A program made the position numbers and the translations under genes. From contig CP075492.1 in the NCBI GenBank assembly GCA_021613535.1, positions 7,688,001 to 7,752,000 of the forward strand: a stretch of DNA of 64,000 nt. The letters run 5' to 3'. Below the pieces are notes generated by a model. It saw nothing but the letters and a program-made list of their open reading frames with translations, was not told where the DNA came from and searched no databases. Positions within the stretch are counted from its first letter, which is position 1. Each line of letters begins with the position of its first letter. This DNA comes from Adineta vaga. Its lineage: Eukaryota > Animalia > Rotifera. Positions 54,096-58,019 of the stretch are shown here, in pieces.

Positions 54096-55147
54096 ATGTT
54101 ACACGAAGAAGATGCATTGATATGGATCGATTTAGAAATGGATGGATTAGATTTAAAAAAGAATTATATTCTAGAAATTGCTTGTATTGTTACAGATTTT
54201 AATTTAACAACGATTCATGAAGGTATATATTTTCTTTTTTATCGAGAACTTTTTCTTCTCTTTTGCTTTTTCAAGGTCCTGATCTTGTTATTCATCATCC
54301 AAAATCATTAATGGATGCTATGGGTCCTTGGTGTATGGAACATCATACAAAATCAGGTCTTGTTCAACAAGTTTTAGATAGTAAACTATCGATGATCGAT
54401 GCTGAAACCGAAATCATAAATTTTATTGAAAAAATAACTTCATCAACAACGAATAGCAAACGTCTTATACTTGCTGGTAATTCTGTTTATGTTGATCGAT
54501 ATTTTTTAGAAAAAGATATGCCACGTTTAAATGCAATGCTCAATCGATCTATTCTCGATTGTAGTACATTAAAAGAATTAATTCATCGTTTTAACTATCG
54601 AATTTATTCTCAAGCACCAATCAAAGGTGGAAATCTTCATCGAGCATTGGATGATATACGAAATAGTATTGAAGAATTTCGATTTTATCAAACAACAGCA
54701 TTTGAAGAAAAGCAACAAATTCAAAATAATCAATCTTTACAAAGCAAACAAGATTTTTCTCAATATCTTGTATGGATTAATGTGAATAACAACTTAGTAC
54801 ACGGTATTTTAACCGATGGAAATTTGAATATAGTCGATGAAATTATTGATGCAAAGACAAATGATGATTTAATGAAATTTTTTCAACGAAATCACATTCG
54901 TCATCAACGAATGATCGTTGTTGCAGGAAAATTCTTAGGTCCAATTCGAGCACAATTGAAAAATGTTGCTTCTGAATTTAATGAATTTTGTCATTATCGA
55001 TCGATTGATATTGATGTTGTTTCTCTTATTTGTGAACGATGGTTTCCAGAGACTTACAAACAACGGCCTATGAATAATAAGCAAGAGAATGATTTAAAAA
55101 ATTCCATTGAACTTCTTCGATTTTATCGTTCAAGAATATTTAAATAG
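54096..55147 (+). CDS. REXO2: oligoribonuclease (Orn/REXO2, DEDDh) fused to a second, degenerate Orn domain; one intron about 54223-54275
   Basis: LIWIDLEMDGLD, EIACIVTD, WCMEHHTKSGL, AGNSVYVDR, HRALDDIRNSIEE; second copy LVWIN...LTDGNLNIV...VAG...HYRSID...ERWFP...DLKNSIELLRFYR. Confidence 0.92.
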
Positions 55148-55198: not shown

Positions 55199-58019
55199 TT
55201 ATAAAACATCGAAAAACAATGGAAAAACACTTTTTGTAATTTGTTTTGTTTTATCATCATTATTTGTTGTTGCTGAAGAAATTACTGAACGATTAAACCG
55301 ATTGGAACGTTGTTGTTGTCGCTGTTGAGATGAAGATGTTTGAAACGATGATTTCAAATTACGAATACAAATATTCACGAGTTGAGTTACACTGTCGAGT
55401 AGGGATGAAGTATCAGGAAATTTACGTTGAGAAAGAAGAAACATCGCTTCAGTAAAAGCAGAGAATGGTAAACCTGGGAGAAAAAAAAGAATTTCTAAGT
55501 CAATCTCAAATTGTTTTTCTCCTTCCCAATATAATTACTTTACCTGATAGAGGAGTTCGTGATACAAATTGTTGCCATTTTCTTAATATTTGATAGTAAA
55601 GAATATCAATAGATGATGTTGTAATCATTTCATCAATAATTCCACATGTACTATTCAAAGATACAAGGAATAAAGTTAGTTTTTTAGAAATATTTCTATT
55701 GTACTTTGTAAATGTTCGAAATTGTACATTATTCATTGTTTTATATCCATGAATAACAACAAATTGAATATATATATAAGCAATTTTATCAATTAAAACT
55801 AGATGTTGATATTTTGTTTTCTCAGTTGATGGATAGATCAATCGTAATTGTTTTACTAGGTTGTTTTTGGACGGTGATCTTGGGCGACTAGTAGCAGATT
55901 TAATCATCGAACGTTTCATTTTAAATGCTGATCGTCCACGTTCATCTTCGGCGACTATTTCAGCAAGAATTTTTGTCTGTTTTAGTTTATTATCTGGTAA
56001 GATAGAACGCTGGGCATGACTAGTAGATTTAATGAGATCAATGTCTTCAAATTCTTTTGATTTTGGATCTGGTGGTCGAGAAAAGTATGGATTTCGTTTG
56101 ATATCAAAACGTGATTTTTGTGCACTTTTAATTCTTTCATTTCGTTCTTCCACTCGACGTTGAGCTACTTTTTCAAGACGTTGTGTTAACAATTCATCAT
56201 TGATTTGAAATTGAGCATGACGAGTACTAATTTATTGAAGAAAAAAACGTTCTAATAATAAGCAATTCAAATAATAACTCACAATGTTTCTAATCTTTTC
56301 TTTGGTAATGCTAATTTCAATGTTTCTAATATTAATGTTTTTTTAATTTCTTCATCAATTGGACTTGTCTGATAGATACGCTTTCCTATAAATAAAAAAT
56401 TGATTCTTTCAAAGACATAATTCCGATTTTATCTTACCTGCATCATTTTCTTTATCAAAATCAATTCGAAGCGAAGGATTAGCATTGACTTCAAGTAAAA
56501 TTGGTTTCAATTCATCAGTTAGAATAATATCAAAACCAACAATCTACATACAATTAATAAAAATCAAATAAGAACATGAAGAATTTCTATTGTCATACTT
56601 GAAAACATGAAACATTCTGTTTTCGAGTTAATGGTATTTCCATTTCATATTCCACTCGTAAATTAGGTAAAATTGCTAGAATTGTTTTATTAATCATTTC
56701 AACAATTAATAATTTGATTTCTTCGATTTTTACACTTCCATACATGCGAGTTAATTGTGTCCAAACAGTACTTAATTTACGTTTACTTCCATCTGTTTGT
56801 TGACTATCTAAGACATGTTTATAAGTTGAACTACGTTTATTTAAAGCATAATTCGTTAAATGCATATAAGTTTGATGAAGATTGTCTGTTGATGGTGCAT
56901 GATAAATCAATGTAGCAAAACGAACAAGTCCTTCATCATATAGAAAAATTTCTAATGGATAAAGATTTAGAATTAAAACATAGATTCGTAAATCAAATTT
57001 TAATCCATTGATTAATAATGGTCGATCGATATATTCTAGAAACAAACGAATCAAGATGAATGATGATTGTTCATTGAAACAAACCTTGAACGACATGTGG
57101 ACGATTAGTAATAGTACAAAGAGCTGGGTCTCGAAGTAAATAGATACCTTCACCTTGAGAACCATCTAGAAATAAAAATTAAAGAAGATCTGTTAGTTGA
57201 ATTTCTTTTGAAGAAAAATCAACCTGATGGTTTAACAATAAATGTTGTTAATGATCGATGATGTTTTTTATCTTGTTGATGAATATAACGTATATCATCT
57301 TTGAATTGTTGATTTTGTTCAGGAAGAAACCATGTTTTGGGATAAAAATCATATTCATTAGGAAATAATAATCTCATATTATTTAATAGACGTGTTAAAT
57401 GAACTTTACGTAATAGATCATTCATACCTGGAAATTTATTAACTCGTCCTGAAGTAAATGCAAAGTTTATATTTCCTTCATGAAATGACGCACAATGCCA
57501 ATAGATATCCGAATCCGGTGTAGTCGTAAATGTACACTATAGAAACAAACAAAAATCAATAATTATTCTGTAAAATACTTTGATGATACTTACTTCTTTC
57601 CATCCAAGTTCTCTGATACATATGCGAACAACATCAAGATTTGATCTTGCTTTACTTGTATCTACTGTGACGGACTTTTTTCCAATATGATGATCATCCA
57701 TTTTTGATGTTGATGAAACAAGTCGTGTTGTTGATGTAAACTCAGTTTTTAATGATGATGCAACTGTTTTCGATGAAAATTGACTCGTTGCCGATTTGAT
57801 TTGTCTTTGACGTTTTGGTGACTTAATTCTTTTCTTTTCTTTTATCTTTCGGAAATTAACTTGACTTTCTCGATTGATCAATAACTTTTCTCGTTCAATA
57901 TTATCGTCAACAATCATATTTATACTTGTACATTGTAATATCGGATCATCATCTTGGTCATGATTTTTCTTTTTAGATATTGAATTAATCGAAGAATTTA
58001 ATAATACTTCTTCTGCCAT
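55199..58019 (-). CDS. TTLL11: tubulin polyglutamylase, TTLL11-like (multi-exon)
   Basis: VTVDTSKARSNLD, VNKFPGM, YDFYPKTWFLP, FIVKPS|DGSQGEGIYL, KFDLRIYVL, HLTNYALNK, CFQ|IVGFDI, LLEVNANPSL. Confidence 0.9.

What the first reader, a model, noticed from the sequence alone, without database searches (positions are those of the whole stretch)
54096..55147. Single-chain pseudo-dimeric oligoribonuclease with apparent division of labour between its two domains
Seen: the gene encodes two Orn-fold domains joined by a Q/N/S-rich linker (about 54704-54760). Domain 1 keeps the DEDDh catalytic residues (IDLE, VDR, HRALDD), the GLD leucine wedge, the PWC tryptophan and the AGNS serine. It has lost the family HYR motif (reads LNRSILDCST at about 54539) but keeps the downstream serine. 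Domain 2 has lost most of the catalytic DEDDh set, including the DxE pair and the histidine, and has also lost the helical lid, yet it keeps HYR intact (CHYRSID, 54992-55000). Established: Orn/REXO2 is a homodimer, and as I recall the Tyr/Arg of HYR are contributed in trans by the partner protomer to cap the 5' phosphate of dinucleotide substrates. Inference: after internal duplication, each half kept only what it contributes to one composite active site, giving a monomeric, asymmetric nano-RNase. The protein also lacks the mitochondrial presequence of animal REXO2.
Basis: partly seen in the sequence, partly recalled or inferred. Interest (0 to 1): 0.9.

Follow-up and report, generated by a model that had tools for sequence, protein, structure and literature searches.

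The report
Rotifer two-in-one dinucleotide RNase
Bdelloid rotifers build the enzyme that finishes RNA breakdown, normally a pair of identical subunits, as one protein whose first half keeps the cutting site and whose second half keeps only the parts that the partner subunit lends to that site.

Summary
Confirmed and extended. The gene (54096-54222 + 54276-55147, one 53-bp intron) is Adineta vaga I4U23_013190, 332 aa. Spliced contigs from three studies span both domains. The same fusion occurs in about 45 protein clusters; the named ones are all bdelloid, including distant Didymodactylos. Domain 1 keeps the catalytic and cis-acting residues but lacks the trans Tyr/Arg. Domain 2 folds as Orn (Z 17.8), is under purifying selection, and keeps HYR in 38/38 sequences. 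New evidence: the inter-subunit Arg-Glu salt bridge is split between the halves. Domain 1 has Glu without Arg and domain 2 Arg without Glu (38/38 each), whereas single-domain Orns rarely keep Glu without Arg (1/74). Domain 2 has lost or shortened the three segments that are disordered in the empty subunit of human REXO2 crystals. AlphaFold2 gives pTM 0.88, with inter-domain strand contacts at HYR. Not shown: activity, monomeric state, the dimer superposition, and internal duplication (AU p=0.08; domain 2 may have another origin). No paper found. The scan noted a probable second copy 4.8 Mb away (s1-494502, not checked). The principle is known (tRNase ZL); this Orn form appears undescribed.

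The parts
54096..54222 (+). Exon 1: start codon, motif I of domain 1 (D12 54129, E14 54135, D16 54141 in place of Thr, Leu wedge L18 54147)
54223..54275 (+). 53-bp GT-AG intron, same position in Didymodactylos and other bdelloid loci
   Evidence: removed in contigs of three studies
54276..54703 (+). Rest of domain 1 (catalytic Orn half): lid with W61 (54329), cis cap S112 (54482) and S139 (54563), D116, H164 (54638), D169 (54653), interface F185
54542..54550 (+). Domain 1 lost HYR site (N132-R133-S134); canonical Tyr 0/38 and Arg 0/38 in the family
54575..54577 (+). Domain 1 E143, the Glu of the inter-subunit Arg-Glu salt bridge, invariant 38/38
54704..54760 (+). Linker, residues 186-204: sequence poorly conserved (0.48), length conserved, dN about equal to dS
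54761..55144 (+). Domain 2: lidless, catalytically dead Orn fold under purifying selection; lacks the wedge loop and lid helices, His loop shortened
54992..55000 (+). Domain 2 HYR (H282-Y283-R284), invariant 38/38: proposed trans base stack and 5'-phosphate cap for the domain 1 site
55013..55027 (+). Domain 2 lost cis residues: D289 in place of the cap Ser, L293 in place of the salt-bridge Glu (0/38 each)
55136..55147 (+). C-terminal Ile-Phe-Lys and stop; I330 and F331 invariant, equivalent to dimer-interface I214/F215 of human REXO2

Best explanation
A bdelloid-wide single-chain Orn/REXO2 pseudo-dimer with one composite active site. Domain 2 folds back onto domain 1 in the place of the partner subunit. 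Domain 1 binds the metals (D12, E14, D116, D169), supplies the base H164, wedges the two bases with L18, stacks the 3' base on W61, and gives the two cis cap serines and E143. Domain 2 supplies Y283 (stack on the 5' base) and R284 (5'-phosphate cap, held by E143), so the enzyme should cut 5'-phosphorylated dinucleotides to mononucleotides, probably in the cytosol. The second site has been dismantled from both sides. Shown: gene, splicing, conservation, folds, reciprocal residue pattern, selection. Inferred: the dimer-like geometry, monomeric state, activity, specificity and location.
For: One spliced contig covers both domains in three studies. Fusion in about 45 clusters incl. Adineta, Rotaria, Didymodactylos, syntenic with a TTLL11-like gene in A. 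steineri, A. ricciae and Rotaria. Of 53 positions conserved in at least 80% of single-domain Orns, 35 are kept only by domain 1, while His, Tyr and Arg of HYR are kept by domain 2 in 38/38 and by domain 1 in 1, 0 and 0 of 38. Published Arg130(B)-Glu139(A) bridge; Arg and Glu co-vary in single-domain Orns, 109/18/1/73 (77/18/1/12 among 50% representatives); the fusion splits them. Two-domain model pTM 0.88, pLDDT 90. Strand assignments at H282-R284 and F331 appear only when domain 1 is present (vs 43). Domain 2's best matches are the lid-disordered REXO2 subunits, whose missing parts 51-59, 85-114 and 190-193 match domain 2's lost or shortened segments. dN/dS of domain 2 is 0.11-0.45. R130A and dimer-breaking mutants are inactive in Orn/REXO2.
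Against: No coordinates were available, so the superposition on the dimer was not done; the contact evidence is indirect, and AlphaFold2 has probably seen Orn dimers in training. Plant Orns have lost Tyr, Arg and Glu as single domains, so an Orn can persist without the cap. Domain 1 has an Asp/Asn at a position that is Thr or Ser in 224/225 canonical sequences, so specificity may have shifted. No activity data. Co-variation counts are not corrected for relatedness.
Confidence: 0.78

Rival explanations
1. Same composite site, but between chains: the protein is a domain-swapped dimer or oligomer in which domain 1 of one chain pairs with domain 2 of another.
For: All residue-level evidence fits pairing in trans equally well. 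The linker is the least confident part of the model (pLDDT 60 at 191-200).
Against: Linker length is held at 22-23 residues in 35/38 sequences while its sequence drifts. A single chain closes the interface at pTM 0.88.
Confidence: 0.1
2. Domain 2 is mainly a structural cover for the hydrophobic dimer face, and the enzyme has changed substrate (longer or differently ended oligomers), as the cap-less plant Orns may have.
For: Plant Orns lack Tyr/Arg/Glu. Domain 1 has D16 in place of Thr, and often an Arg at the Tyr position (26/38). I330 and F331, interface residues, are invariant.
Against: A mere cover would not need invariant His-Tyr-Arg. Plants lose the Glu together with the Arg, but domain 1 keeps the Glu in 38/38.
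Confidence: 0.1
3. Origin rival (compatible with the best mechanism): domain 2 is not an internal duplicate but a second Orn of different origin, possibly taken from an Acidimicrobiia-type bacterium, fused to the native gene.
For: The best tree places domain 2 beside Acidimicrobiia-type Orns (84/88, unstarred). These score highest against the domain 2 profile (82 and 77 bits vs 72 for the next best) and share short motifs with it. Domain 2 has no intron, domain 1 has one or two. Bdelloids are known for foreign genes (own knowledge).
Against: Those bacterial sequences were retrieved because they share words with domain 2, so the comparison is biased. Domain 2 is a very long branch. Monophyly of both halves is not rejected (p-AU 0.08). 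No prokaryote encodes a domain-2-like protein.
Confidence: 0.2
4. Artefact: two adjacent genes, or a decaying duplicate, merged by annotation.
For: Such merges exist among other tandem hits (P0144, P0151).
Against: Both domains lie in one exon-2 reading frame. Spliced contigs span them. The frame is continuous in 9 of 10 metagenome loci. Domain 2 is under purifying selection.
Confidence: 0.01

Closest known systems
Oligoribonuclease Orn / human REXO2 (DEDDh diribonuclease; PDB 6N6I, 6N6A; NCBIfam NF003765; Pfam PF00929)
   Same: Domain 1 is 45% identical, Z 26.5, rmsd 1.7 A over 181 residues. All active-site parts exist once, summed over both halves.
   Different: Orn/REXO2 is a symmetric homodimer of single domains with two sites. 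Here two unequal domains in one chain can form only one site. No mitochondrial presequence. Motif I Thr is replaced by Asp.
tRNase ZL (long tRNase Z) versus homodimeric tRNase ZS (PMC5646807)
   Same: Homodimeric nuclease turned into a monomer of two related domains, one keeping catalysis and the other the substrate-recognition part.
   Different: Unrelated fold (metallo-beta-lactamase). The catalytic half is C-terminal there and N-terminal here. Analogy only, no homology.
Marine-plankton tandem Orn-Orn proteins P0142/P0291/P0295 (unnamed)
   Same: Two Orn domains in one chain with a linker of similar length.
   Different: Both halves keep DEDDh and HYR and are sisters in the tree (100/99): an independent, still symmetric duplication.
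Plant (streptophyte) oligoribonucleases
   Same: Catalytic domain without the Tyr-Arg cap.
   Different: Single domain, and the salt-bridge Glu is lost too; no second domain to supply the cap.
Adineta steineri Rex3 homologue with two DEDDh domains (PMC12129344)
   Same: Tandem DEDDh domains in a bdelloid.
   Different: Other family (Rex3/REXO1); both active sites are canonical.

Membership tests
Orn/REXO2 diribonucleases | DnaQ/Orn fold and family profile | tested here: met
   NF003765 130.8 bits for exon 2 part of domain 1 (cut-off 106), 46.9 for domain 2; fold matches for both
Orn/REXO2 diribonucleases | DEDDh catalytic residues | tested here: met
   Domain 1: all five invariant; domain 2: not met
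Orn/REXO2 diribonucleases | Leu wedge and Trp stack with helical lid | tested here: met
   Domain 1 L18 18/18, W61 32/32; deleted in domain 2
Orn/REXO2 diribonucleases | Phosphate cap: two cis Ser plus trans Tyr and Arg | tested here: met
   Met only across the two domains: S112 37/38 and S139 38/38 in domain 1; Y283 and R284 38/38 in domain 2. Spatial assembly inferred
Orn/REXO2 diribonucleases | Single-domain protein forming a symmetric homodimer with two sites | tested here: not met
   Two unequal domains in one frame and transcript; second site lost from both sides
Orn/REXO2 diribonucleases | Partner subunit sits on the Orn two-fold interface | tested here: inconclusive
   pTM 0.88 and context-dependent strand contacts; interface residues kept; no coordinates to superpose
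Orn/REXO2 diribonucleases | Cleaves 5'-phosphorylated dinucleotides in strong preference to longer RNA | not testable with these tools
   Needs enzyme assay
Animal mitochondrial REXO2 | N-terminal mitochondrial presequence | tested here: not met
   In-frame stop just upstream of the ATG; domain starts at residue 6; no upstream exon in RNA contigs
Animal mitochondrial REXO2 | Orthology to animal REXO2 | tested here: inconclusive
   Best solved relative is human REXO2, but the tree does not resolve domain 1 with animals
Tandem-duplication pseudo-dimers (tRNase ZL type) | Both halves descend from one gene | tested here: inconclusive
   Not sisters in the best tree; monophyly not rejected, p-AU 0.08
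Tandem-duplication pseudo-dimers (tRNase ZL type) | Complementary loss of function between halves | tested here: met

The most novel reading that the evidence does not exclude
The protein is a chimera of a native REXO2 half and a horizontally acquired bacterial Orn half that together form one asymmetric active site. It fixes in sequence the one-site-occupied state seen in some human REXO2 crystals and has replaced the ordinary REXO2 in bdelloids.
Probability: 0.12. Interest if true: 0.88.

Novelty: new variant of a known kind. Interest (0 to 1): 0.66.

Why it matters
Orn and REXO2 perform the last step of RNA decay and are described as obligate symmetric homodimers. This natural variant separates, residue by residue, what a subunit needs for its own site from what it lends to its partner. 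That makes open points directly testable without engineered heterodimers: whether one site per dimer is enough, whether the two sites communicate, and what the trans Tyr/Arg and the Arg-Glu bridge add to catalysis versus length selection. It is also a clean case of subfunctionalisation within one chain, with an older, less eroded stage (Didymodactylos) and an independent symmetric tandem (marine plankton) for comparison. It raises the question of how bdelloid mitochondria clear dinucleotides if this presequence-less form is their main REXO2.

Tried and rejected
wrong frame for exon 1, corrected. Pfam does not detect domain 2; NCBIfam, PDB sequences and fold searches do. ESM Atlas gave only single-domain Orn clusters; small clusters are not searched, so this is no proof of novelty. 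The wide structure search found no solved chain that matches both domains as tandem Orn folds. No stand-alone domain 2 among the top 150 representatives or in prokaryote genomes; the one metagenome exception, L047, is a truncated fragment joined to a DEAD-box helicase piece, taken as a chimera or broken copy. Other tandem hits rejected as relatives: P0144 (pseudoscorpion, two near-identical copies around a transposon), P0151 (contains a SURF4 piece, probably a merged model). A search for long Orn fusions did not return the ankyrin-Orn proteins noted by the scan. A canonical single-domain bdelloid REXO2 was not among the top 120 hits or the 30 named look-ups; this does not exclude one. Trees could not fix the origin of either half. 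Paper searches found no description of this fusion; the library lacks most subscription papers.

Full report
GENE AND SOURCE. The ORF starts at ATG 54096, has one 53-bp GT-AG intron (54223-54275) and ends at 55147. Its two exon translations equal database protein P0001, Adineta vaga hypothetical protein I4U23_013190, 332 aa. Both Orn-like domains beyond residue 43 lie in one uninterrupted exon. Contigs from three separate studies (X1, X14, X18) skip exactly this intron and run through both domains in one piece; X14 and X18 end at 55272 and 55257. The runs are not on record as RNA, but removal of a GT-AG intron marks the contigs as transcripts. An in-frame stop lies just upstream of the ATG, so there is no presequence.

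BOTH HALVES ARE ORN FOLDS. Domain 1 matches human REXO2 best (E 2.5e-29; Z 26.5, rmsd 1.7 A). Domain 2 matches Orn/REXO2 at E 2e-10, 1e-14 as a profile. Modelled alone (pLDDT 89) it aligns over its whole length to REXO2 with Z 17.8, rmsd 1.8 A, 127 residues; the best non-Orn is Z 11.5.

DISTRIBUTION. A search with domain 2 returned 41 close clusters (49-100% identity), then ordinary bacterial Orns; three more came from the domain 1 search. All named ones are Adineta or Rotaria; unnamed ones are metagenomic and presumed bdelloid. Among 1.84 billion representatives only this cluster and a Didymodactylos carnosus protein (P0143) cover the full profile. Didymodactylos shares intron 1 and the same pattern, with fewer losses. 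The gene lies tail to tail with a TTLL11-like gene in A. steineri, A. ricciae and Rotaria. The fusion therefore predates the split of these genera. Domain 2 has dN/dS 0.11-0.45, domain 1 0.08-0.25, and the linker is near neutral in most pairs.

DIVISION OF LABOUR. Published structures place the DEDDh residues, Leu wedge, Trp stack and two cap serines in the subunit that holds the substrate, and Tyr129/Arg130 (human 164/165) in the partner (PMC6613908; PMC6900737; PMC9676404). One paper assigns the Tyr to the same protomer (PMC6521605). In 38 fusion sequences domain 1 keeps every cis residue at 97-100%, and domain 2 has lost or deleted them; only the fourth acid survives, in 54%. His-Tyr-Arg is 38/38 in domain 2 and 1, 0, 0 of 38 in domain 1.

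The Orn dimer has an inter-subunit salt bridge, Arg130 of one chain to Glu139 of the other (PMC9676404). In 201 single-domain Orns, Arg and Glu travel together: both 109, Arg only 18, Glu only 1, neither 73 (plants lose both; counts are not corrected for kinship). Domain 1 has the Glu without the Arg in 38/38, and domain 2 the Arg without the Glu in 38/38. One of the two symmetric bridges is kept, between domain 2 R284 and domain 1 E143, and the other is lost from both sides. This is what pairing of domain 1 with domain 2 predicts, and it argues against domain 1 pairing with itself.

STRUCTURE MODEL. AlphaFold2 on the whole protein gives pLDDT 90 and pTM 0.88, with only the linker low. Residues 282-284 and F331 are assigned as strand or bridge in the two-domain model but not in domain 2 alone, and F185 forms a bridge too. 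I infer inter-domain contacts at HYR and at the two C-terminal Phe residues, which correspond to interface residue F215 of REXO2. Domain 2's top structural matches are the REXO2 subunits with a disordered lid (6j7y_A, 6j7z_A, 6j80_A, 6rci_B, 6rcl_B). The parts missing in such a subunit, 51-59, 85-114 and 190-193, correspond to domain 2's deleted wedge loop (about 51-60), deleted lid (about 83-117) and shortened His loop. Other crystals have both sites filled, so this asymmetry is not obligatory in ordinary Orn.

MECHANISM. Most likely a single-chain enzyme with one site that cleaves 5'-phosphorylated dinucleotides, domain 2 acting as a built-in partner subunit (0.78). Rivals: the same pairing between chains (0.10); a structural cover with changed specificity (0.10), suggested by cap-less plant Orns and by D16, where 224 of 225 canonical sequences have Thr or Ser; artefact (0.01).

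ORIGIN. Each half forms its own well-supported clade including Didymodactylos, but the halves are not sisters in the best tree; domain 2, a very long branch, falls beside Acidimicrobiia-type Orns without starred support. Holding the halves together is not rejected (p-AU 0.08). Those bacterial sequences were selected by similarity to domain 2, so the signal is biased. Internal duplication is the simplest account but is not shown; a foreign origin of domain 2 stays open (about 0.2). The tree held 38 rows and no other rotifer REXO2.

COMPARISON AND NOVELTY. It works like Orn/REXO2 and belongs to that family by fold and catalytic residues, but fails the single-domain homodimer criterion. The evolutionary route is known from tRNase ZL (PMC5646807). 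No paper describing an Orn/REXO2 pseudo-dimer was found, and databases list the protein as hypothetical. An unrelated marine plankton lineage has a symmetric tandem with both sites intact. The scan's own notes list a probable second copy in this genome and several ankyrin-Orn fusions; none was checked here. Whether bdelloids also keep an ordinary REXO2 is unresolved. Verdict: real, conserved, a new variant of a known kind; interest 0.66.

Noticed in passing
P0142, P0291, P0295; loci L003-L005: Tandem Orn-Orn protein (423-438 aa) from marine metatranscriptome-type contigs, in three independent assemblies, with both domains catalytically intact and an N-terminal extension that looks like a targeting peptide. 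Organism unknown; an independent duplication.
   Followed up: partly
P0061-P0141 (plant hits): Streptophyte oligoribonucleases have replaced the cap Tyr-Arg by His-Val/Ile and the salt-bridge Glu by Ala, although the cap is described as strictly conserved. No characterisation found.
   Followed up: partly
window 54141-54143: Motif I Thr is replaced by Asp in 17/18 fusion proteins (Asn in Didymodactylos), and the lid has Gly at the position of V. cholerae D59. Effect on substrate choice unknown.
   Followed up: partly
window 55199-58019, minus strand: Convergent tubulin-tyrosine-ligase-like (TTLL11-like) gene; a 70-bp intron at about 55473-55542 is spliced out in all four runs, and its 3' end lies close to or overlaps the Orn 3' UTR. 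Linkage conserved in Adineta and Rotaria.
   Followed up: partly
window 54443: All four RNA-type runs carry a 6-base in-frame insertion in the Ser/Thr loop of domain 1 relative to the window: allele or strain difference.
   Followed up: no
L047:300-760: Metagenome contig in which a DEAD-box helicase fragment runs in frame into a truncated domain 2; chimera or broken copy.
   Followed up: partly
L045, L046, L039: Intron 1 is absent in L045/L046, and reads through in frame in L039.
   Followed up: no
P0151 (UniParc UPI00066F2A73): 539-aa model with a SURF4 piece and two eroded Orn domains, both lacking the cap Arg; probably a merged gene model, organism not identified.
   Followed up: partly
P0037, P0040 (Rotaria sp. 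Silwood2): Damaged-looking copies of the fusion with internal deletions and substitutions at conserved sites; possible decaying duplicates.
   Followed up: no
L007-L025: Marine Group II archaea (Poseidoniales) encode ordinary Orn-like proteins.
   Followed up: no
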